Shown piece by piece: positions 747 through 55,961 of a stretch of DNA of 64,000 nt. The stretch is from Octopus sinensis (lineage: Eukaryota), in NCBI RefSeq assembly GCF_006345805.1, contig NC_043012.1, positions 14,880,001-14,944,000 of the forward strand, in the 5' to 3' direction. The notes below the pieces were generated by a model that saw only the letters and a program-made list of their open reading frames with translations, did no database searches and was not told where the DNA came from. Numbering within the stretch: the first letter of the stretch is position 1; the number at the start of each line of letters is the position of its first letter. The translations under genes and the position numbers were made by a program.

Positions 747-894
747 TATATATATGTATGTATGTATGTATATATATGTATGTATGTATATATATGTATG
801 TATGTATATATATGTATGTATGTATATATATGTATGTATGTATATATATGTATGTATGTATATATGTATGTATGTATGTATATATATATGTATG

Positions 895-954
<60 letters not shown>

Positions 955-1052
955 TATGTATGTATATATATATATGTATGTATATATATATATGTATGTA
1001 TATATATATATGTATGTATATATATATATGTATGTATATATATATATGTATG

Positions 1053-1085
<33 letters not shown>

Positions 1086-1100
1086 GTATGTATATATATG

Positions 1101-1155
<55 letters not shown>

Positions 1156-1545
1156 ATATATGTATGTATGTATATATATATATGTATGTATGTATATGTA
1201 TGTATGTATGTATATGTATGTATGTATGTATATGTATGTATGTATATATGTATGTATGTATATATATGTATGTATGTATATATATGTATGTATGTATATA
1301 TATATGTATGTATGTATATATATGTATGTATGTATATATATGTATGTATGTATATATATGTATGTATGTATATATATATGTATGTATGTATATATATGTA
1401 TGTATGTATTATATATGTATGTATGTATTATATATGTATGTATGTATATATGTATGTATGTATGTATATGTATGTATGTATGTATATGTATGTATGTATG
1501 TATATGTATGTATATATGTATGTATGTATATATATATATGTATGT

Positions 1546-1579
<34 letters not shown>

Positions 1580-1662
1580 GTATATATATGTATGTATGTA
1601 TATATATGTATGTATGTATATATATGTATGTATGTATATGTATGTATGTATGTATATGTATG

Positions 1663-1701
<39 letters not shown>

Positions 1702-2053
1702 GTATATGTATGTGTATGTATATATATGTATGTGTATGTATATATGTATGTATGTATATATATATGTATGTATGTATATGTATGTGTATGTATATATATG
1801 TATGTGTATGTATATATGTATGTATGTATATATATGTATGTATGTATATATATATGTATGTATGTATATATATATGTATGTATGTATATATATATGTATG
1901 TATGTATGTATGATATATATGTATGTATGTATGTATATATGTATGTATGTATGTATGTATATATATGTATGTATGTATATATATGTATGTATGTATATAT
2001 ATGTATGTATGTATATATATATGTATGTATGTATATATATGTATGTATGTATG

Positions 2054-2086
<33 letters not shown>

Positions 2087-2249
2087 GTATATATATGTAT
2101 GTATGTATGTATGTATATGTATGTATGTATGTATATATGTATGTATGTATGTATATATATATGTATGTATGTATATATATATGTATGTATGTATATATGT
2201 ATGTATGTATATATATATGTATGTATGTATATATATGTATGTATGTATG

Positions 2250-2333
<84 letters not shown>

Positions 2334-2358
2334 ATGTATGTATATGTATGTATATATA
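747..2358. repeat. 1.6-kb compound microsatellite (TATG)n/(TA)n with an internal (TG)n block
   Basis: Near-strict pyrimidine-purine alternation with few phase breaks. Stop codons cannot occur in an alternating tract, which explains the 164-605 aa ORFs. Confidence 0.98.
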
Positions 2359-8480: not shown

Positions 8481-9860
8481 TCAGGTTGAGTCAAAAGTAA
8501 GCAACATTTTGAACCATGAAGAATTTGTACCAGATTTTTCCAGAGTTTTGAATATTTTTTAAGCATTTATTTGCAATTGTCTGATAATACAGACATAGAC
8601 TTGCTCAAATGCATCAATAAATTAACATTGATATTTTTTTTCATCATTGTTACATTCGTCTGAAATGGAACTGTCAAAGTGCGATATTCGAACAATTTTG
8701 GTATTCAACTTCAAAAAAGGATGTAAAGCAGCTGAAACTGCTCACGATATCAATGAAATGTTTGGTGAGGAAATGACCAGTGAGTGGTCAGCTTGAAAAT
8801 GCATTAACCCTTTTGTTACCATATTTCTTTTGAGATGCCCTGTGTTTCTTTCAATTAATATTAAATATAACAAAGAATTTAGTAAAATAACTTACTTATC
8901 ATTAAGCTAGTATTAGGAATATAAATTGGGACTAAGGATTGGTGGAAGATTTTAATTTAGAACTCATGAAAATAAGACGTACTACAGAGCCTGAGGCAGT
9001 TTCAGCTTGGTTAGTTTTGAAAGGTTTAAAGAATTTTGCAGTGGAGAACTGAGCCTTGGAAGTTGTGAGCATAGTGGACACTCATCTGCCATCGATGATG
9101 GTCAACTGAAGACTGTCATTGAGAAAGATCCGCATAAAACCACTCGAGAACTGGTAAAAGAACTTCAAGTTAGCCAGAAAACTGCCTGTAACCATTTGCA
9201 TGCAATTGGAAAATCAAAAAAGCTCGACAAATGAGTACCACATGATTTGAATGAAAATTAGAAAATGTGCAAATATGAAATTTGCTTCTTCTCCGTAACC
9301 AGACCAATCCATTTCTTGACCATATTGTAACTTGCAATGAAAAGTGGGTTCTGTACTATAATAAAGAACGTTCTTTGCAGTGGTTGGACCAAAATGAAGC
9401 ACCGAAAACTTTTCCTAAACCTGAACTCTTCAAAAAGAAGGTTATGGTGACTGTTTGGTGATGTACAACTGGACTCATCCACTGTAACTTCTTAAAACCT
9501 GGAAAAATCATTACTGCAGGAACGTATTGCCATGAAATTGCCAAATTGAATGAAAATCTGCTCCACTTCCGTCCCATAAGGGTCAACAGAAGAGGGCCAA
9601 TCATTCTTCATGACAATGCTCGACCACACGTTTCACTAATGACACTCCAGAAGTTGAGGGAATTTGGCTTCGAAGTTCTTCACCACCCAGCTTATTCCCC
9701 AAACCTGACTACCACTTTTTCAAGCACTTTGATAGTTTCCTGCAAAAGGAGTTCAAAAATCAAACCAATGCTGAAAGTATATTCAAAGAGTTCACCAGCT
9801 CCAGAACTCCAGATTTTTATATTACCAGAATAAACAAACTTGTAACTCATTGGCAAAATT
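8481..9860 (+). mobile_element. Degenerate mariner (DD34D) transposon, 3' end lost
   Basis: TA|TCAGGTTGAGTCAAAAGT left TIR. ATG at 8665 (MELSKCDIRTILVFNFKKGCKAAETAHDIN), then VPHDL, VTCNEKW, HDNARPH and HPAYSP motifs with stops and frameshifts. Confidence 0.93.
8808..9025. mobile_element. TTAA piggyBac-like MITE nested in the mariner ORF
   Basis: TTAA at 8804-8807 and 9026-9029. Removing the MITE and one TTAA restores the frame KCIKEFCSGE. Sister copy at 10116-10362. Confidence 0.85.
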
Positions 9861-10115
9861 CTGCTGCAGTTGACTTTGCCTTTCATCATTTTGAGGTCAA
9901 TAAAATTTGTACCAGTTAAGCACTGGGATCAAAGCAGTTGACTAGCTCCCTCCTCAAAAATTTCAGGCCTTGTGCCTGTAGTAGAAAGGAATCTTTTTAA
10001 CTTTTTACCTTGCTGATGGTACCTATGTACATGGCTTGCACAGCTCACAGAAATTACTAGCCACAAGTCACTGGTTTATGTCATCTGGGACATTCTTCAC
10101 CAGGGAAAGACTTAA

Positions 10116-29727: not shown

Positions 29728-29853
29728 GTCACGTGACCCGTTCGTTGTGAAGCATCGAAATGTGGTTGGGTGGTGCGAGTGGTGAGAGTTACCTGCCCCT
29801 GCGCATGAGGATCTGCTCTGAGCGGAAGTTGTCAGAATGGAAGCGAAAATGGC
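29728..29853 (+). promoter_or_regulatory. Promoter motif cluster of the RIM/Piccolo-like gene
   Basis: CpG-retaining segment with GTCACGTGAC (29728-29737, E-box/CLEAR palindrome), TGCGCATG (29800-29807, NRF1-like), GCGGAAGT (29822-29829, ETS) and AAAATGGC (29846-29853, YY1-like). Confidence 0.65.
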
Positions 29854-29953
29854 AGCTGGAGACAAAAACAATTTACCTTATGCATTGCCTGATCTTTCGG
29901 CGCTTACGGAAGCCGAAAAGCTTCAGGTGATGGCAGTTGTACAGCGAGCCAAG
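29837..29953 (+). CDS. Coding exon 1 of a RIM/Piccolo/Fife-family (Rab-binding N-terminus) protein
   Basis: MEAKMAAGDKNNLPYALPDLSALTEAEKLQVMAVVQRAK followed by the AAG|gtaggt donor (phase 0). The PDLS-LTE-E---V-AV--R motif matches the RIM/Piccolo/Slp N-terminal helix. Confidence 0.85.
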
Positions 29954-31071
29954 GTAGGTGAAAACCAAGAATATCATTATCCTATTCGATTCGTGTAAAT
30001 CGTTCCTTATCAAAGGCTAAGTAATCCCGTGCTGCTGTAATTTTCTTTCTCTCTCTCCCATGAAATTCTCCCGTTCTTTGCAGGATTCTTTTACCGTCTA
30101 ATTAATATCACCTGCTTTTTTCATTTTATTTATAAACATTGATAATGTTTAGTATTTTTGGTATTATCTTTTGTTTTGCTTTTTGTGTTCCATTCCGACC
30201 CATTCCTATCCGTTGATCGCTGGTAGCTCTGATCATTCCGTGCTACTCATTATTAATAAAACGCATTCTCCTTTCGTCCAGCATTTATGGAAACGAATGA
30301 TTTCTGATGTGTAAATTGCTTGATGGAATTCTTGGAAAGCTAAATGCGTAAATCAAATGTTCGGTGATGCTTATATCTCCGACCGTTTGTTGTTCTCCAT
30401 CTGCCCCTCCTCCACTTCGTTCCTCGCAGACAACAATTTTGCTGTCAACACATTCAAAAGTCGCCTCATTACGACTGCAAACAGAAATTTCACAATCTTT
30501 CATTATTCCACTAACTTTTTCACCAATTGTCCAAATACTTCGAAGCTGTCCTTTATTTTCTGCTTCACATTTATTCTCAACTTAGTTTTTTGTTTCAAGA
30601 TAAATTTTACTACCGAAGCTAATTTATGTATTGAGAAGTCAGATGTTTACTTCATGATATCCTATTGGAAGTTTATAGACCCATCAAATCACTATTACCA
30701 TCATCATAATTTCTATCACCATACTACTATTACTACTTACATTATTGGTCGTGAAAAGATTTTTTTTTTTCCGCTTTTTTTCTCATGCATATTTTCGTTG
30801 TTTCTTTGCTCTACACAACTTGCGATATAATTCTTAGTCTGCTTCTATCGATGCGCTCCAATTAGTCTTCTGCTAAGATCTACTCTGTCGCACACATTTC
30901 TTTCTCTATTCATTTTTTTTCCCTGTGTAGTTAATGTGATTGTACCTCTTACTGGTCATATATGGTTTTGTTGTTTAACTCCCACCCCACATCAAGTCAG
31001 TATTGCTGATCGTGCAAACCGATGATCGAAGACGTTCTATCCGTGACCATCTCGTAATATAGTGCATTTGC

Positions 31072-36315: not shown

Positions 36316-36605
36316 ACATGAGGAATATTTGAAGGAAGCAATTGCCCCAGCTCCCCTTCAGGGTTGGCGAAAGCGATGTGGTGGACAATGAAAAACCTGG
36401 CTGATGACGGTCAAGGCTGATCTGGAACCCAACCTAGGCCCCTATATCTACAGCATTCGCCGCTGGCATAAGGAGTGGTTGGAGATCACGTGGTCGTTAG
36501 CCTCAGATCGCCAGGCCTGGTCGGCGTTTGTGAGAGATGCAGCATTGAGGATGAATGAAGCCAGCTCAACCCACCCCGGGTGAATGCTGTAAGAAGAAGA
36601 AGAAG
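36316..36605 (+). mobile_element. 5'-truncated RTE LINE 3' end with (AAG)n tail
   Basis: Translates as APLQGWRKRCGGQ*KTWLMTVKADLEPNLGP..LASDRQAWSAFVRDA. 10-bp TSD AATATACTAT at 36306-36315 and 36606-36615. Confidence 0.9.
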
Positions 36606-37389
36606 AATATACTATGCTCTCTTTTGAAGTTTCATTTTAGGAGATGCAGGAAGGATCAGTTTTAATGCAAACTCCTCTTTACGTACATAATATAGTTAAA
36701 ACCATGATTCACTAAAACACCATCAAATTGTATCCGTTTGCTAAGTCAGACAATATTTGAAAACCTCCGCTTTAAGCATTACCTCCCACATAAGTTCCTT
36801 TCCTCATTTAGTGCATAGCCCTTTCCTTAAAAGTATTTACCTTAAAAATGCTCTACCCCAATATTACATTGCATTGAAAAAAAATAACTCCTAGTACTGT
36901 CTTTATAAACTACCCCAAATGCCATGCCCCTTGTTTGAACTTGCTTTTTTTCTCACTTAATGCCACCCCTGATTAAATATACTTCATGTGACATTTGGGA
37001 GAAGCCTATTTAATTAGAGGTAGCTTCTAATTAAATACTCACACTGTCTCTCTAATCACCTTTAAACACTTTCTTTTCTAACCTCAACTCCTTACCTGCT
37101 CATGTTTCTTTGTCAAGCCTGAAGTTGTCAAGTCAAACATTAACTATATTAATTAATCCATTTACCTAATTAAGGTTCTTTGGCTTACTACATTCAGTAT
37201 GCTGGTGCCCACTTTACCATTAACTATATTGTGTTATCTTACTTTCCAAGTTCAAAAGAAATAAAGTATTCTATGCTTATGTCTCTATACATTTAAAATT
37301 TTTGTAAAATCCGGCATTTTGCCAGTGAGATTGTGTAAGGTTTGTGTCACACTTTAGAGATTATTTACAACTTTTAGTAGGCTGGTTTC

Positions 37390-47800: not shown

Positions 47801-48930
47801 TGGAATTTAAGAAGTATAGGGTTTGATTTTCCATCTTCTAAACGATATTTACCTGATTTTCTAACCTGTCTTCAAAGCTATTCTGCGTTCAAGTATTCCT
47901 TTATTTTCTGTATTTATATATTTATTTATTAAGCTTTTCAAGAAAAGGGGTGATAGCGATTTTGAAGTTTTGGTCTATTGGCTATAGTCTGATAAAAGCA
48001 ATTAGGCTAAAACAGTGAAGTCATTGTCACCCGTTTTGTTATAAAAGCATAATAAACATGTACTTTACTGAAAAGCATTGAATATGTTTCCATTTTAATG
48101 TTAAATTGTTTTTGTTATAGCACAGAAACAAACGTGTGTGTTTGTATGTGTATGTATGTGTTTGTATGTGTATGTATGTATAGTACAGCACAAAGTGGAA
48201 GTTATTGAAACCAGGGATAATAATGCTTAAGAAAGGCGCTCTAAGCAATTGCAATAATTACGGAATAAATCTGCTGTCTGTTTTCTTACAAACTGTTCTG
48301 CAGTGACCTCCTTACCTGCTTAAAGAAGGTGGTTAATGAAGATCTATGATGGGAACCGGTGGGATTCAGGAATGGAGGGTTGTGAGTGAACAAATTGTCA
48401 TGTTTGGCAACATTGAATCATGAGTTTGAACAGTTGCCTTTGGTCGACTCTGACTTAAAGAAGGTCTTCAATGACATGCAAAGTGAATCTCTATGCAAAA
48501 CTGCCATGCTGTGTAGAGTCCCCACCCACCGCATCAACATTTTGAGGCCAGTGTAATAGCAGGTGTGTGAAGGTCACCAAACTGCTTTGTCGATAACAAA
48601 GGATTTCTTTTTTGATGTATTTCTAGTGGTGGCCAAGAACAACATGACTATGGTCTGTTGTTAATTAATTTAAGTTTGAAGCAAATATGAAGGTAAATGC
48701 TAATTAAAGATGGAAATTGATTTCAAGTTTTGGCACAAGGCCAGCAATTTTGACCCTCAGTACTCAACTTCTTCTTCTTACAGCATTCACCTGGGGTGGG
48801 TTGAGCTGGCTTCATTCATCCTCGATGCTGCATCTCTCACAAACGCCGACCAGGCTTGGCGATTTGAGGCTAACGACCACGTGATCTCCAACCACTCCTT
48901 ATTCCAGTGGCGAACGCCGTAGATATGGAA

Positions 48931-49021
48931 GCCCGCATAGCTCAGTCAGTAGAGCATCAGACTTTTAAGAACTGTCAATTATGAAATCTGAGGGTCGCAG
49001 GTTCAAGTCCCTCTGCGGGTG
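48931..49021 (+). tRNA. trnK: tRNA-Lys(TTT) with 18-nt intron at 37/38, probably a retrocopy/pseudogene
   Basis: Cloverleaf GCCCGCA..TGCGGGT, D stem GCTC/GAGC, anticodon stem TCAGA/TCTGA, TTT at 48964-48966, intron 48968-48985 with a C32:G(-3) anticodon-intron pair. Lesions: G18>A, C72>T and two T-stem mismatches. Confidence 0.9.
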
Positions 49022-49027
49022 ACAAGA

Positions 49028-49031
49028 TTTT
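49028..49031 (+). terminator. Pol III T4 terminator of the pre-tRNA trailer
   Basis: ACAAGA-TTTT directly follows the discriminator base, then RTE sequence resumes. Confidence 0.65.
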
Positions 49032-50090
49032 AGGCCTCCATATCTACGGCATTCGCTTGATCTGGAACCCAACCTAGGCCCCCATATCAGTACTCAACTG
49101 GTACTTATTTTATTAATCTCAAAGGGATGAAAGGCCAAATTGACCCTGGTGGAATTTAAACTTAGGACATGAAGATGGATGAAATACAGCTAAGCATTTC
49201 ACCCGGCTTTGCTAATGATTCTGCCAGCTCACTGCCTTAATTAAGGACAGAAACTGGACATTGACTGGACATGAATGAGTGAAAATATATCACAAATTAG
49301 TGGTTCACTTTGCAAACGCATAGTTTTGGATTCAGTCCTACTGCATATGGCTTTTTAGGCAAGTGTCTTCTACTATAACCCCAGGCCGATCAAAGCCCAA
49401 TGAATGAATTTGGTTCCAGTGACAGGAACAAAAAAAAATTAGAATTGTTAGTTGTGCATTAAAATGTCTCATAAATGAAATGTCATTGGCTGAAGACACC
49501 TGTTTAAGGTATTATGAAGACACCTGTTTAAGGTATTGAGCAGCTATGCTTTGTATGCCTTATTTGTAAGCCTCAGCAGTTAGACCTTGAATGCTTTTGA
49601 TGATTGAGTGAGGCTGCACTTATACTGAAAAACATCGGTGAAACCAAACTATGTACAGAGTTGTCTTCCATACTTCTTAATGGAAAGAATAGCCTTTATC
49701 AACTGATGTTTTTGAACTGTATATTTGAATAGAGTAGTTTTTTAATGTTGTTATACATTAGATCTAGTTTAAATTACTTGTACATTGATAGGTTGTTTAT
49801 ATTTTTGCATAGATGTATTCTGTCTGTTTATCTGTAAAACTAGTAACAATAATTGCCTTTAGAATTTGGTTTGTTTTAGGTTTTTTTTTTTCCTGCTTAA
49901 TTTTTGTTCCCATATTGAATTACTTTCAGCATATATTGGCTTCATTTATATTCTTCAAGTTTTACATAACCAATAGAATAAAATTCGGTTTTTATACTTC
50001 TACAGAGTAAACAATAATACTCTGGAGACTTAAATGTGGGATTTTATTTATGGACCATCCTAAATGAAATTTTTTTTTCTTGTTTTGCAG

Positions 50091-50338: not shown

Positions 50339-51617
50339 CAAGGTGGTATCAAAAGGTTCCTGGACTAGTTATGTTTAATAAAAAAATAACTTATTCACCC
50401 AAGCTTTTATATCATCTTCGAAATAGTCACCTTGTGCAACAATACACCAGTCCTACATTCCTGCTACTTTTGGAATCTGGCCTGGAAGTCATCTTCCGTA
50501 AGCAAGTTGAGGACCTTCTGTGATTTGCTCTGGATCTTGACAACAGTGTTAAAATGGTAACCTTTGAGCTGCATTTTCATCTTGGGAAAGAGATGGATGT
50601 TCACAGGTGCTAAATCTGGCAAATAGGGCGAGTGTGGAAGCGATACAATGTTGTTTTTGGCGAAAAATTCACAGGTGAGGAGAGCTTGGTGACTGGGTGC
50701 ATTGTTGTTGTGAAGAATCCAATTCTTTGTGCTCCATAGATCTGGTCGCTTTCACCAAATGTCCTCTCTCCAATGCTTCAAAACCTCACAGTAGAACTCT
50801 CGATTGATGGTCTGATTCAGGGGGGCAAATTCTTGATGTGCAATACTGTGGATATCAAAAGAAATGATGAGCAGGCTCTTCTTCAGTCATGTAGATGAAG
50901 GCCTCTTCCATTGTGATGACTGCTGCTTCATCTCAGGGTTGTACCTGTAGACTCAACTCTCATCACCAGACCAGTCATGATCTTTTGACATGAAAGATGG
51001 GTCATCAGTGGCATACTGACAAAGATCTTGACAGACTTTGACATGATGATCTTTCTGCTCTGGTCAGCAGGCAGAGGACAAACTTGGCAGAGACATGCTG
51101 CATGTTCAATTTAGACATTAGGATAGCTTGCATGGATCCATACAACACACCAACAACATCAGTAATGTCATTCGTTGTCCTCAGACAATCCTCATGCACA
51201 AGCTGATGAATTTCCTCCACATTTCCAGGGGTGACATTCACGGCAGGTCTTCCAGACTGTTTGTTGTCTTCTAGGGATGTTCTTCTACTTTTGAAGTGCC
51301 TGTGCCACTTGAAACATTGCAAACAACCAATTGCCTTGTCACCATAAGCTTGCCAAAGCCTGCTCAATGTCTCTGTAGCAGACTTCCCAAGTTTAACACA
51401 AAATTTCACGTTGGCTCTTTGTTCCAACTTCCTGTCCATGACAAAATTGCAGACTACAGCATACACGTGATCAGAAGAACACAAATTTCACAACTTGCAA
51501 AATAGATACAGTGATGTCAACACACTGCCCCATGAAGGTCACTGCTTGCATGCTACCATGTGCAGCCATCTGTTGTCGTGCCACAGAAACAGTCAGGGAA
51601 ATTTTGATGCCACCTCA
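50339..51617 (-). mobile_element. Full-length degenerate mariner (1279 bp)
   Basis: TIRs CAAGGTGGTATCAAAA / TTTTGATGCCACCTCA with TA on both sides. MDRKLEQRANVKFCVKLGKSATET..VSAKFV, then SGDES, HNNNAP and PYLPDLAP with stops. Confidence 0.93.
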
Positions 51618-53707: not shown

Positions 53708-53927
53708 TTAACATTAGGCATTTAGTTGTATTAGTACTAAGAAATCTTCTAAGTTTGTAAATTTATTGATTTATCCAATCATGTAATGTTGTGTAGCCAT
53801 GAAATTTTGTGAGCTTAACATTTGTTGAAATTTGAATTCATAATGGCTTAGTGGATAATCTGTTAAGTTCTGCAGTAATATTCTTAATATTTCAATACAT
53901 ATTGGCATTGGATGTTGTGCTGACAAC

Positions 53928-54216
53928 AAAAAACCTGGCTGATGACAGAACAACGAAAAATCTGGCTGATGACAGTCAAGGCTGATCTGGAACCCAACCT
54001 AGGCTCCCATATCTACGGCGTTCGCCACTGGAATAAGGAGTGGTTGAGATCACGTGGTCGTTAACCTCAAATCACCGCTGGAATAAGGAGTGGTTGAGAT
54101 AACATGGTCGTTAACCTCAAATCGCCAGGTCTGGTCGGCGTTTGTGAGAGATGCAGCATTGAGGATGAATGAAGCCAGCTCAACCCACCCCGGGTGAATG
54201 CTGTCTCAAGTCAAGT
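53928..54216 (+). mobile_element. RTE LINE 3' end with two internal tandem duplications
   Basis: Same family as 36316-36605; (CAAGT)n tail; duplicated blocks 53929-53948/53956-53975 and 54025-54073/54075-54123. Confidence 0.88.
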
Positions 54217-55104
54217 TGTATCCTTAGGTAACACACTTCCTGATTTGATCTGTGTTCACATGGACTCAATATGAATGTAAAAACAACATAAGTTGTAATC
54301 ATTGATCAATTTGAAAACTAATGAGCAATTAAATAGCTTGATGTTTAGATTGTTTTGTTTTTTTTGACAGCTGCCTAGTGTAGCTGTAATGCTTGTTATC
54401 ATGTTGAACAGTCTAAATATATCCCTGGGTGTAATGATAATGAGGTGATAATATCAAGAATGAAATGTAGAAATCTTATGTTATGGAAAGACTGAACTCA
54501 CTGATTTGGTTGTGTACTGGCTTATTGGCTGAAAAATCAACAGTTCTATCTTCACTCACTGACATTTTTGTCTCTCTAACACAGCTGATTATATATTAAG
54601 AGTTAGTTATAATTTGTATAAGTAGAAGGAGCTCTGTCATAGGACAAATACTTGTAACCCTGAGCTCAGAGTTTCACACAGCTACAAAAAACAAAAGGAT
54701 GATGTGTGTACCCATATCATTTCCTATTTTCATTATATAACCTTTTCTGACAATTGCTAGGGTTTTCTCAACTCTTGGTATGAAATCAATAGATAAATTG
54801 GCTGATGTAAAAATATAATATTGTATTTTAATAATAATAATGATGATGATGATGATAAGCATCCACACAATCTCCATTGATTCACTCCCTTTCAAAGTGC
54901 TTGGGTTAACCAAAGCTATTGTAAAAGAGACTTGCCCAAGATATTATTCAGTAGGGGCAAACCTGAGACCTTGTGATTGATGCCAAGATAGGTCCATATA
55001 TCATCATCATCATGTCCACTTTTCCATGTTTGCACAGGTTGGACAGAATTTGTTGAGGCATATTTTCTATGGCCAGCTATCCTTTCTACTGCCAACCTTT
55101 ACTA

Positions 55105-55961
55105 CAAGGGAGCACCCAAAAGAAACCGGAATTTTCCACTATTATTTTATTCACTTAGTTTTACATATTTACACTTTAATTGCCTTCAAAGTATTCTCCA
55201 CTTGAAGCAATGGTCCAGGCACATTTTCCACTACTCGAAGCAGTGCTGGAACTCTTGCAAAGTGATGCCTTTTAACACTTCCATTGTTTTTTTCCTCACT
55301 CACCTCTTCCACATCTGCAAATTCCGTAGCACCAGTTTTTGTCACCAGTGATGACCTTCGAAAAAAGGTTCGAATCAACTTCCAACTGTTCTTTCAGTTC
55401 ACGACATGCATTCAGTTGTGATTGCTTTTGATCTTCCGTGAGCAAGCGAGGCACAAGTTTTGCTGCAACTCTTTTCATTCCTCACTCAAAATTCGTTGGC
55501 AGGAGCTCCAGGACACACCAGTTATATCAACAAGTTCATCAATTGTTCGGTAATGGTCCTCCAAGATCAATTCATGAATTTTCATGTATTCATGCAGGAG
55601 GTTGATGGTTGTCCTGAATGGGGTTGGTCTTCAAGTGACCAATCCTAAAGCATAGAAACCATTTGTAAACTTGTGTTTTGCTCATGGCGGCATCTTTGTA
55701 AGCTGTTTCAGCCACCGTTTTCACCAGCAGTAAACAGAATTTTGCAGAAGCACGCTGTTCCTTCATTTCAGCCAGCGCAAAAATTGAGGAACAGAGAAGC
55801 AAAACAAAGATCATCATGTGGCAGTATGACTCCACCCGACACTGCCATTTCGCAGACTGATGACTGAGGATGACATCAAGTGGCATCTAGTGGCAGAAAC
55901 CTGAACTACAACAGGCTTGTCCCACACAGAATGTTTCTGGTTACTTTTGGATACCCCCTTG
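55105..55961 (-). mobile_element. Internally deleted mariner
   Basis: TIRs CAAGGGAGCACCCAAAAGAAACCGGAA / TTCTGGTTACTTTTGGATACCCCCTTG with TA flanks. MKEQRASAKFC and MKRVAAKLVPRLLT..VITGD fragments. Confidence 0.9.

What the first reader, a model, noticed from the sequence alone, without database searches (positions are those of the whole stretch)
48758..49099. RTE retrotransposition event that captured a whole unspliced pre-tRNA by template jumping
Seen, between 12-bp TSDs: antisense RTE 3' end (48770-48928), AA, complete intron-containing tRNA-Lys in sense (48931-49021), its trailer ACAAGATTTT, then two short sense RTE pieces (49032-49056, 49058-49087). The two RTE orientations meet at the same CCATAT point, as in twin-primed 5' inversions. 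Established: L1 twin priming, U6/L1 chimeras, and R2 RT jumping onto RNA 3' ends. Inference: the second-primed cDNA copied RTE RNA, jumped once within it, then jumped onto the oligo-U 3' end of a nascent Pol III transcript and read it to its 5' end. Retention of intron, trailer and a 2-nt leader implies capture of nuclear precursor RNA before TSEN/RNase Z processing. This is a snapshot of how tRNA-LINE fusions (SINE precursors) could form with an RTE enzyme.
Basis: partly seen in the sequence, partly recalled or inferred. Interest (0 to 1): 0.85.

Follow-up and report, generated by a model that had tools for sequence, protein, structure and literature searches.

The report
RTE insertion carrying an unspliced pre-tRNA
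A single jumping-gene (RTE LINE) insertion in an octopus-type genome also contains an RNA-derived copy of an unspliced, untrimmed lysine tRNA precursor, a rare but explicable by-product of a known copying mechanism rather than a new kind of element.

Summary
A 318-bp block (48770-49087) lies between perfect 12/13-bp target-site duplications. Eight paralogous copies of the host SINE in the window are continuous across the site. The block contains a 149-nt antisense RTE 3' end with its (AAG)n tail and a sense tRNA-Lys(UUU) with an 18-nt intron at position 37/38. It also holds the trailer ACAAGATTTT and two sense RTE fragments.

The best reading is one RTE target-primed event with a twin-primed 5' inversion, whose second cDNA ended by copying an unspliced, 3'-untrimmed pre-tRNA.

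- The "2-nt leader" is not established. AA plus the tRNA's first GCC can be read as RTE sequence (a 24-nt inverted repeat), so the RNA may have been 5'-processed.
- The internal jump is equivalent to a 43-nt tandem duplication; a neighbouring copy has two such duplications.
- The tRNA is a decayed pseudogene, with three CpG transitions at near-invariant positions.
- The geometry cannot yield a SINE.

Antisense tRNA/LINE-1 chimeras attributed to twin priming were published in 2026, so this is a variant of a known kind.

I could obtain neither the source gene, nor an orthologous empty site, nor the genome-wide copy number.

The parts
48757..48769 (.). Left target-site duplication (T)CAGTACTCAACT
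   Evidence: 13-nt direct repeat with 49087-49099. A single copy is present in 8 paralogous SINE copies.
48770..48779 (-). Complement of the RTE (AAG)n microsatellite tail. It is in register with the CT at the end of the TSD, a 2-nt priming microhomology.
   Evidence: Sequence. Copy A ends in GCTGT(AAG)n at 36586-36606.
48780..48928 (-). Antisense RTE 3' end, 149 nt: C-terminal coding sequence, stop codon and 7-nt UTR. This is the first-strand cDNA arm.
   Evidence: 95% identical to 36444-36602, E=4e-69. Translates to ..HIYGVRHWNKEWLEITWSLASNRQAWSAFVRDAASRMNEASSTHP(R)*. 3 private substitutions in 148 columns.
48929..48933 (.). Ambiguous junction AA+GCC. It is either RTE cDNA (RTE has GGC-YY-CCATAT) overlapping tRNA bases 1-3, or 2 extra/leader nt followed by the tRNA 5' end.
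   Evidence: The BLAST match to copy B runs to 48933. The inverted-repeat arm is 48910-48933. Alignment.
48931..49021 (+). tRNA-Lys(UUU) retro-pseudogene, anticodon 48964-48966. A and B boxes are present. G18A, G51A and C72T are all CpG transitions.
   Evidence: Rfam 48.9 bits; ARAGORN -i. Comparison with 114 environmental intron-containing tRNA-Lys(UUU) genes. Intact genes score 62 bits.
48968..48985 (+). 18-nt intron at the canonical 37/38 position
   Evidence: ARAGORN -i. Length and the AG start are typical of 114 natural genes, whose introns are 11-29 nt with mode 18-20.
49022..49031 (+). 3' trailer ACAAGA plus the Pol III terminator TTTT. The last T could also be the T of RTE CTAGG.
   Evidence: Sequence. 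In natural genes the T4 run starts 4-7 nt after the discriminator in 71 of 114.
49032..49056 (+). Sense RTE fragment 1, equal to copy-A positions 36436-36460, 131-155 nt from the RTE 3' end. It forms the inverted repeat with 48910-48933.
49057..49057 (+). One extra T between the two sense RTE fragments (untemplated nucleotide or slippage)
   Evidence: Sequence compared with copies A and B.
49058..49087 (+). Sense RTE fragment 2, equal to copy-A positions 36418-36447, 144-173 nt from the RTE 3' end. It abuts the right TSD and marks the second priming site.
   Evidence: 97% identity to 36418-36448 and 53983-54013, E=7e-9.
49088..49099 (.). Right target-site duplication CAGTACTCAACT
48718..49242 (+). 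Host cephalopod-type SINE copy interrupted by the insertion (SINE sequence is 48718-48769 and 49100-49242)
   Evidence: The joined flanks align without a break to 8 other copies in the window. The same family is present in Octopus bimaculoides locus L123.
36317..36606 (+). Comparator: 5'-truncated RTE copy A with an (AAG)n tail, used as the coordinate reference
53925..54206 (+). Comparator: 5'-truncated RTE copy B with 27-bp and 50-bp internal tandem duplications

Best explanation
One target-primed reverse transcription event of an RTE-type LINE, inserted into a SINE copy in an octopod genome.

Shown:
- The 318-bp block is one insertion with a 12/13-bp TSD.
- The plus strand next to the left TSD is cDNA of the RTE tail and its last 149 nt.
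- The strand next to the right TSD is antisense to RTE positions 144-173, then to RTE 131-155. It then runs antisense to a complete tRNA-Lys(UUU) transcription unit, from the terminator U-run back to base 1, intron included.

Inferred:
1. After second-strand cleavage, the 12-nt 3' overhang primed on the same RTE RNA just where the first cDNA had arrived. This is twin priming.
2. That second cDNA re-copied about 25 nt after a 43-nt backward slip, or copied a template that already carried such a duplication.
3. It then switched to the oligo-U 3' end of an unspliced, untrimmed pre-tRNA and ran to its 5' end.
4. The two cDNA 3' ends were joined at a GCC/GGC microhomology, or after addition of two A's.

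The captured RNA was a nuclear precursor. It had been cut neither by the splicing endonuclease nor by RNase Z. Whether RNase P had already removed the leader cannot be told. The copy has since decayed and is a tRNA pseudogene. It cannot act as a SINE.
For: - TSD and inverted repeat.
- Eight paralogous empty sites.
- RTE identities and coordinates.
- The RTE fragment is the C-terminus of an ORF. It matches the extreme C-terminus (965-1014 of 1024) of a protein with APE endonuclease plus RVT_1 domains.
- tRNA and intron.
- Intron length and start, and the distance to the T4 terminator, are typical of 114 natural intron-containing tRNA-Lys(UUU) genes.
- The 12-bp TSD fits the RTE-clade peak of 10-12 bp, and inversions go with TSDs of 10-20 bp (PMC4245944).
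- tRNA/LINE-1 chimeras are mostly antisense and are attributed to twin priming (PMC13174262).
- Decay is similar in both parts: 3 of 148 columns in the RTE arm and 3 CpG transitions in the tRNA. This fits simultaneous insertion.
- Copy B shows that short tandem re-copying occurs in this family.
Against: - There is only one locus and only paralogous empty sites. I have no orthologous or allelic empty site, no reads and no source gene.
- The three overlapping RTE pieces differ at the two pyrimidines after GGC (TT, CT, CC), although one RNA should have given identical copies. Later C-to-T changes or RT errors must be assumed.
- Microhomologies at the priming and jump sites are only 1-3 nt.
- 5' inversions have hardly been seen outside L1.
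- Both the direct arm and fragment 1 end within 1-7 nt of the same RTE position (about 155 nt from the 3' end). The model does not predict this.
Confidence: 0.68

Rival explanations
1. The template was already a chimera: a tRNA-Lys precursor joined upstream of RTE position ~155. It could have arisen by RNA ligation, by Pol III read-through of a genomic tRNA-RTE fusion, or as a low-copy SINE-like family. Ordinary twin priming on that RNA then gives fragment 1, trailer and tRNA as one continuous inverted cDNA. Only the 30-nt fragment 2 then needs a jump.
For: On the plus strand the tRNA, trailer and fragment 1 are contiguous and in the same sense, as in U6/L1-type chimeras. Fragment 1 and the direct arm end at almost the same RTE coordinate, as expected if RTE sequence in the template began there. 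RNA ligation is one of the proposed routes to LINE-1 chimeric insertions listed in PMC13174262.
Against: No second copy of the tRNA or of the tRNA/RTE junction exists in the 64-kb window or in 20 kb of O. bimaculoides. Copies A and B continue as RTE upstream of that coordinate. The TTTT terminator would normally stop Pol III before the RTE part. A UUUU-OH end is not the usual ligation substrate (own knowledge).
Confidence: 0.12
2. DNA-level capture. While the broken TPRT intermediate was repaired, repair synthesis or end joining copied or inserted a piece of a genomic tRNA-Lys gene between the two RTE cDNA ends.
For: A genomic tRNA gene also carries the intron and trailer, so their presence alone does not prove an RNA template.
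Against: The captured piece starts within 0-2 nt of tRNA base 1 and ends inside the T4 terminator. Those are the ends of the transcript; a random DNA fragment would rarely have both. The source gene could not be retrieved, so shared flanks could not be checked.
Confidence: 0.08
3. Nested independent events or an assembly artefact. Either an inverted RTE insertion was later hit by a separate tRNA retrocopy, or the contig is mis-joined across repeats.
For: The region is repeat-rich, with about 25% of the window multi-copy even within itself. Read support could not be examined.
Against: No direct repeats flank the tRNA unit (left ..GATATGGAA, right AGGCCTCC..). A second insertion exactly at the inversion point is improbable. 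The TSDs are perfect and the flanks rejoin precisely into the SINE consensus. Decay levels of the parts are equal.
Confidence: 0.05

Closest known systems
tRNA/LINE-1 chimeric insertions (PMC13174262, Cell Genomics 2026)
   Same: tRNA and LINE sequence share one TSD-flanked insertion. The tRNA is antisense to the LINE 3' part, and twin priming is the proposed cause.
   Different: Those are human L1 events and mostly carry half-length tRNA pieces whose breakpoints resemble tRNA-half cleavage sites. Here the LINE is RTE-type in a mollusc. The tRNA is a complete unit with intron and 3' trailer, so it came from a precursor. Two extra RTE fragments lie between the tRNA and the TSD.
L1 twin-priming 5' inversions (Ostertag and Kazazian 2001, cited)
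   Same: Direct and inverted LINE segments lie within one TSD. The inverted segment starts at the point where the direct one stops (4-11 nt overlap). The TSD of 12-13 bp lies within the 10-20 bp range of inversions.
   Different: The LINE clade is different. In cell assays 5' inversions were seen almost only with L1 in human cells. Here the inverted cDNA continues onto a foreign RNA.
U6/L1 and other small-RNA/L1 chimeras made by RT template switching or RNA ligation (PMC4476161; PMC13174262)
   Same: A Pol III transcript ending in oligo-U is copied after a LINE template within one event. Inside the inverted part, the tRNA lies 5' of sense RTE sequence, as in U6/L1.
   Different: U6 is sense to the L1 3' end and is made during first-strand synthesis. 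Here the switch happened on the second-primed cDNA.
R2 reverse transcriptase end-to-end template jumping (Bibillo and Eickbush; own knowledge, not retrieved here)
   Same: Jumps onto the 3' end of an unrelated RNA need little or no homology and can add extra nucleotides. This matches the 0-1 nt homology at the U-run, the extra T at 49057 and possibly the AA.
   Different: That is an in vitro property of R2. No biochemical data for an RTE enzyme were found or tested.
tRNA-derived SINEs with RTE tails and RTE-derived bodies (Kojima 2018, PMC5786205)
   Same: The same ingredients occur: a tRNA, RTE sequence and the RTE machinery. Cephalopod SINE bodies (Ceph-domain) contain RTE 5' sequence.
   Different: A SINE needs the head and the RTE 3' tail in one orientation and no terminator between them. 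Here the tail is antisense and TTTT follows the tRNA. No second copy was seen.

Membership tests
RTE-type LINE insertion made by TPRT | Flanking target-site duplication of the clade's usual length (10-12 bp) | tested here: met
   12/13-bp perfect TSD. The clade peak of 10-12 bp is quoted in PMC4245944.
RTE-type LINE insertion made by TPRT | 3' end with a short UTR and a simple-repeat tail abutting the TSD; 5' truncation | tested here: met
   Stop codon, 7-nt UTR and (AAG)n lie directly against the left TSD. Copies A and B are 5'-truncated in the same way.
RTE-type LINE insertion made by TPRT | Encodes a single ORF with APE endonuclease and reverse transcriptase | tested here: inconclusive
   Only the last 63 codons are in the window. 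They match the extreme C-terminus of a 1024-aa APE+RVT_1 protein on a 3.6-kb contig, and other RVT_1 proteins. No full-length copy was examined.
RTE-type LINE insertion made by TPRT | Placement in the RTE clade by RT phylogeny | not tested
   No RT domain of this family and no named reference set were available. The clade label rests on architecture and tail type.
Twin-primed 5' inversion | Direct and inverted LINE segments inside one TSD pair, with no internal TSDs | tested here: met
Twin-primed 5' inversion | The TSD-proximal end of the inverted segment maps to where the direct segment stops | tested here: met
   The direct arm covers RTE nt 1-149 (or 154) from the 3' end. The inverted fragment 2 covers nt 144-173, with nt 144 against the TSD.
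Twin-primed 5' inversion | Empty pre-insertion allele showing that all parts arrived together | not testable with these tools
   Only paralogous SINE copies were available. The only orthologous contigs found (L124-126) are 70-78% identical and cover another part of the window.
LINE/small-RNA chimera from an RNA template | The small-RNA part is bounded by the ends of its transcript, with no flanking genomic DNA | tested here: inconclusive
   The 3' boundary lies inside the T4 terminator and the 5' boundary lies 0-2 nt before base 1. The source gene was not retrievable, so shared flanks could not be excluded.
Unprocessed pre-tRNA as template | Intron at 37/38 and a 3' trailer to the U-run are retained | tested here: met
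   These features are typical of 114 natural genes.
Unprocessed pre-tRNA as template | 5' leader retained | tested here: inconclusive
   AA can be leader, untemplated nucleotides or RTE sequence. The RTE reading gives a 24-nt inverted repeat reaching tRNA base 3.
Functional tRNA gene | Intact cloverleaf and conserved tertiary bases | tested here: not met
   G18A, G51A (breaks the 51-63 pair) and C72U. These positions are 113/114, 114/114 and 109/114 conserved in natural genes. The score is 48.9 bits against 62 bits for intact genes.
tRNA-derived SINE | tRNA head and LINE 3' tail in the same orientation, and multiple copies | tested here: not met
   The tail is antisense to the tRNA and a terminator follows the tRNA. 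There is no other copy in the window or in L123. Genome-wide copy number is not testable here.

The most novel reading that the evidence does not exclude
In cephalopods the RTE reverse transcriptase regularly switches onto nascent, oligo-U-ended Pol III precursors. These precursors are hardly modified and so can be copied full length. Such events would both seed tRNA-headed SINEs and disperse complete tRNA transcription units (internal promoter, intron and terminator) as retro-copied tRNA genes. This locus would be the first recognised footprint.
Probability: 0.1. Interest if true: 0.7.

Novelty: new variant of a known kind. Interest (0 to 1): 0.42.

Why it matters
The locus is a natural record showing that a non-L1 LINE enzyme can do two things in vivo. 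It can prime from both sides of its target break, and it can switch onto an unrelated Pol III transcript. The retained intron and trailer identify the captured RNA as a nuclear precursor, which places the reaction next to nascent tRNA. They also give an unusual case of a retrocopy that keeps an intron.

The case supports template switching as a source of tRNA-LINE junctions beyond mammals. It is nevertheless one decayed locus whose geometry cannot give a SINE. It is worth a genome-wide screen, but it is not a new mechanism.

Tried and rejected
Rerunning with -i found it.
2. A word-index protein search with the RTE C-terminal peptide found nothing. The exhaustive HMMER search did find relatives.
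3. Source gene. A pattern for intron-containing tRNA-Lys(UUU) was scanned in metagenome and prokaryote-genome contigs. It returned more than 120 environmental eukaryotic genes but none with this intron or acceptor stem; the best match was 65 of 73 exon positions. They served only as a yardstick.
4. Orthologous empty site.
   - I screened 173 non-repeat ORFs by eye.
   - I found one exon-like ORF (29838-29954) and searched with it.
   - The only relatives are 1.2-2.3-kb Logan contigs at 70-78% DNA identity that cover 29.5-31.9 kb. They are too distant and too short to reach 48.7 kb.
   - No same-species sequence appears to be in the protein collection, and the protein searches are now exhausted.
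5. 20 kb of O. bimaculoides (L123) shares SINE and other repeat families but has no RTE copy and no tRNA.
6. An RNA fold of the RTE 3' region, made to look for a pause structure at the junction cluster, was no more stable than shuffles, z=+0.38. The pre-tRNA fold was also not informative, z=-1.5.
7. I considered and rejected a model in which the pre-tRNA 3' end primes second-strand synthesis on the first cDNA. That would give a sense tRNA-RTE product, not the observed antisense arm.
8. I considered and rejected the idea that the tRNA belongs to the host SINE. Eight paralogues lack it.
Full report
**What is there.** The window is AT-rich, repeat-dense eukaryotic DNA. It shares SINE and other repeat families at 75-87% identity with Octopus bimaculoides chromosome sequence (L123), so it comes from an octopod.

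Reading 48757-49099 on the plus strand gives the following:
- (T)CAGTACTCAACT
- TCTTCTTCTT
- 149 nt antisense to a repeat that occurs twice more in the window
- AA
- a 91-nt tRNA
- ACAAGATTTT
- 25 nt and then, after one extra T, 30 nt of the same repeat in sense
- CAGTACTCAACT again

The tools confirm each part.
- Rfam finds one RNA gene in the whole window, a tRNA at 48931-49021 (48.9 bits, E=2e-7).
- ARAGORN with introns enabled calls tRNA-Lys(UUU) with an 18-nt intron at 37/38.
- The repeat finder returns the 13-nt direct repeat and a 24-nt inverted repeat, 48910-48933 / 49033-49056.
- BLAST within the window gives 95% over 159 nt (E=4e-69) for the antisense arm, 97% over 31 nt (E=7e-9) for the distal sense piece, and 88-92% over 24-26 nt (E=5e-4 to 2e-3) for the proximal one.

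**It is an insertion.** The flanks belong to a cephalopod-type SINE. When the flanks are joined with one TSD copy, eight other SINE copies in the window align straight across the junction..gaccc-cagtgcgtaactggtactta... These are paralogous empty sites. They show that everything between the repeats, tRNA included, arrived at a staggered break of 12-13 bp.

**The repeat is an RTE-type LINE 3' end.** Copies A (36317-36606) and B (53925-54206) are 5'-truncated.
- Copy A ends in GCTGT(AAG)n.
- The last ~190 nt are coding..KTWLMTVKADLEPNLGP.IY..R.W.KEWLEITWSLASDRQAWSAFVRDAALRMNEASSTHPG*. Only 7 nt lie between the stop codon and the repeat tail.
- The peptide matches the extreme C-terminus of a 1024-aa protein with APE endonuclease and RVT_1 domains on a 3.6-kb contig, and several other RVT_1 proteins.
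- A single ORF of about 1 kaa, a minimal 3' UTR, a trinucleotide tail and a TSD in the 10-12-bp RTE range (PMC4245944) all fit RTE.
- I did not place the family in the RTE clade by phylogeny.

**Junction anatomy.** I number RTE from its 3' end, with nt 1 the last T of GCTGT.
- The direct (antisense on plus) arm covers nt 1-149.
- Fragment 2, next to the right TSD, covers nt 144-173, with nt 144 touching the TSD.
- Fragment 1 covers nt 131-155.

The strand that starts at the right TSD is therefore cDNA in this order: RTE 144 to 173; one extra nucleotide; RTE 131 to 155; then the pre-tRNA from its U-run to base 1. After that it continues as the complement of the first cDNA.

The point where the direct arm stops and the point where the second cDNA starts coincide, with a 4-11 nt overlap. 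This is the signature of twin priming. The left junction is in register with the tail repeat (..CAACT|TCTTCTT, 2-nt homology). Homologies at the other joints are 1-3 nt.

First, at the relevant point RTE reads GGC-YY-CCATAT. The variants are copy A CC, copy B TC, fragment 1 CT and fragment 2 CC. The plus-strand ..ATATGG-AA-GCC.. can therefore be RTE cDNA running up to and overlapping tRNA bases 1-3. BLAST extends the match to 48933, and the inverted repeat found by the tool includes these bases. The "2-nt leader" is thus one of three readings, the others being untemplated A's and RTE sequence with C-to-T changes. A 5'-processed, 3'-unprocessed, unspliced intermediate is just as compatible. From general knowledge of the La-dependent pathway, where RNase P usually acts before RNase Z, it is a common species.

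Second, fragment 1 followed by fragment 2 is exactly what a 43-nt tandem duplication of RTE nt 131-173 would look like. Copy B carries 27-bp and 50-bp tandem duplications a few dozen bases away. Backward re-copying is therefore a habit of this family and need not be treated as a special jump.

Third, the tRNA is dead. I compared it with 114 distinct intron-containing tRNA-Lys(UUU) genes recovered from environmental eukaryotic contigs.
- Positions 6/67 and 7/66 differ in a compensatory way, which looks like a genuine lineage variant.
- It also has G18A, G51A and C72U at positions that are 99%, 100% and 96% conserved.
- All three are CpG transitions, and one breaks a T-stem pair.
- Intact genes score 62 bits against 48.9 here.
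- The RTE arm has 3 private changes in 148 columns. That level of decay is similar and fits co-insertion.

**RNA or DNA template?** The same 114 genes show that the captured unit is a normal transcription unit.
- Introns are 11-29 nt (mode 18-20) and half begin with AG.
- The first T4 run lies 4-7 nt after the discriminator in 71 of 114 genes. Here the intron is 18 nt, begins with AG, and the T4 run lies 6 nt after the discriminator.
- The copied piece begins at base 1 (or -2) and ends in the terminator. Those are the ends of the Pol III product, which a random DNA fragment would rarely match.

This favours an RNA template. Proof needs the source gene, which I could not reach.

By inference, a full-length cDNA is also easier to make from a precursor than from mature tRNA-Lys(UUU). 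The anticodon-loop and other modifications of the mature tRNA block reverse transcriptases (own knowledge). This may explain why the human L1 chimeras mostly carry tRNA halves.

**Comparison with what is known.**
- Template switching of LINE enzymes onto Pol III transcripts (U6/L1 and others) is established.
- A 2026 catalogue reports 21 human tRNA/LINE-1 chimeras, predominantly antisense and attributed to twin priming (PMC13174262).
- 5' inversions have been seen almost only for L1 (PMC4245944).
- RTE sequence is known inside SINE bodies, including the cephalopod Ceph-domain (PMC5786205).

The present case adds a different clade and phylum, a complete precursor with intron and trailer, and serial template use on the second-primed strand. 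It is not a SINE precursor as it stands. The only RTE 3' tail is antisense to the tRNA, and TTTT separates the tRNA from the sense RTE fragments. The same switch during first-strand synthesis would give a head-tail arrangement, but that product would still carry the terminator.

**Unexplained.**
- The three overlapping RTE pieces differ at the two pyrimidines after GGC.
- The direct arm and fragment 1 end within 1-7 nt of the same RTE position.
- This could mean a preferred stop or an RNA end near nt 155. It could also mean that the template was already a tRNA-RTE chimera, which is the main rival explanation.

**Verdict.** I rate it a new variant of a known kind, of moderate interest, and worth a genome-wide screen.

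Limits: there is one locus. I have no orthologous empty site, no reads, no source gene and no genome-wide copy number.

Noticed in passing
window 29838-29954 (+): Likely first coding exon of a host gene: MEAKMAAGDKNNLPYALPDLSALTEAEKLQVMAVVQRAK followed by a consensus donor AAG|GTAGGT. From memory the motif resembles the N-terminus of Rab-effector/RIM-type proteins. The RTE/tRNA insertion would then lie about 19 kb downstream, probably in intron 1. Orthologous Logan contigs (L124-126, runs SRR11869391/84/94) keep the peptide at 95% identity, but their DNA is only 70-78% identical.
   Followed up: partly
window 53923-53975 and 54028-54123: RTE copy B carries two internal tandem duplications (27 bp x2, 50 bp x1.9) inside the C-terminal coding region. 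This suggests frequent backward re-copying by this family's reverse transcriptase, or later slippage.
   Followed up: partly
window 36450-36458 and 36582-36590: Perfect 9-nt complementarity, ACAGCATTC / GAATGCTGT, between the region where all the junctions cluster and the very 3' end of RTE. It extends to about 15 bp in the predicted fold. In the consensus two pairs are G-U. The overall fold is not more stable than shuffles, so any role in enzyme recognition or pausing is open.
   Followed up: partly
L121/L122 (contig CBDBEG010000035.1, labelled MAG Rubritalea sp.): A 14-kb contig binned as a bacterium consists of a 1054-bp tandem array. Each unit carries three eukaryote-type tRNA genes, one of them an intron-containing tRNA-Lys(UUU). 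This is almost certainly eukaryotic contamination of the MAG.
   Followed up: partly
L001-L120 (metagenome contigs): Intron-containing tRNA-Lys(UUU) genes with an identical anticodon arm are very common in marine and freshwater eukaryotic contigs. An intron in this isoacceptor is therefore widespread outside fungi.
   Followed up: partly
window 747-2358: A 1.6-kb (TATG)n / 18-mer microsatellite block with strong GC skew. It produces long spurious ORFs on both strands.
   Followed up: no
window 51005-51484 (-) and about 9000-9900, 55000-55400: Decayed mariner/Mos1-type transposase relics (HTH_48-like N-terminus; 53-61% identical to O. bimaculoides 'GVQW3-like' proteins).
   Followed up: partly
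window 48757 and 49087: The host SINE copy has an extra T before CAGTAC that the paralogues lack. It makes the repeat 13 nt long and overlaps the last T of the RTE CATAT, so the exact second-strand nick is uncertain by 1 nt.
   Followed up: no
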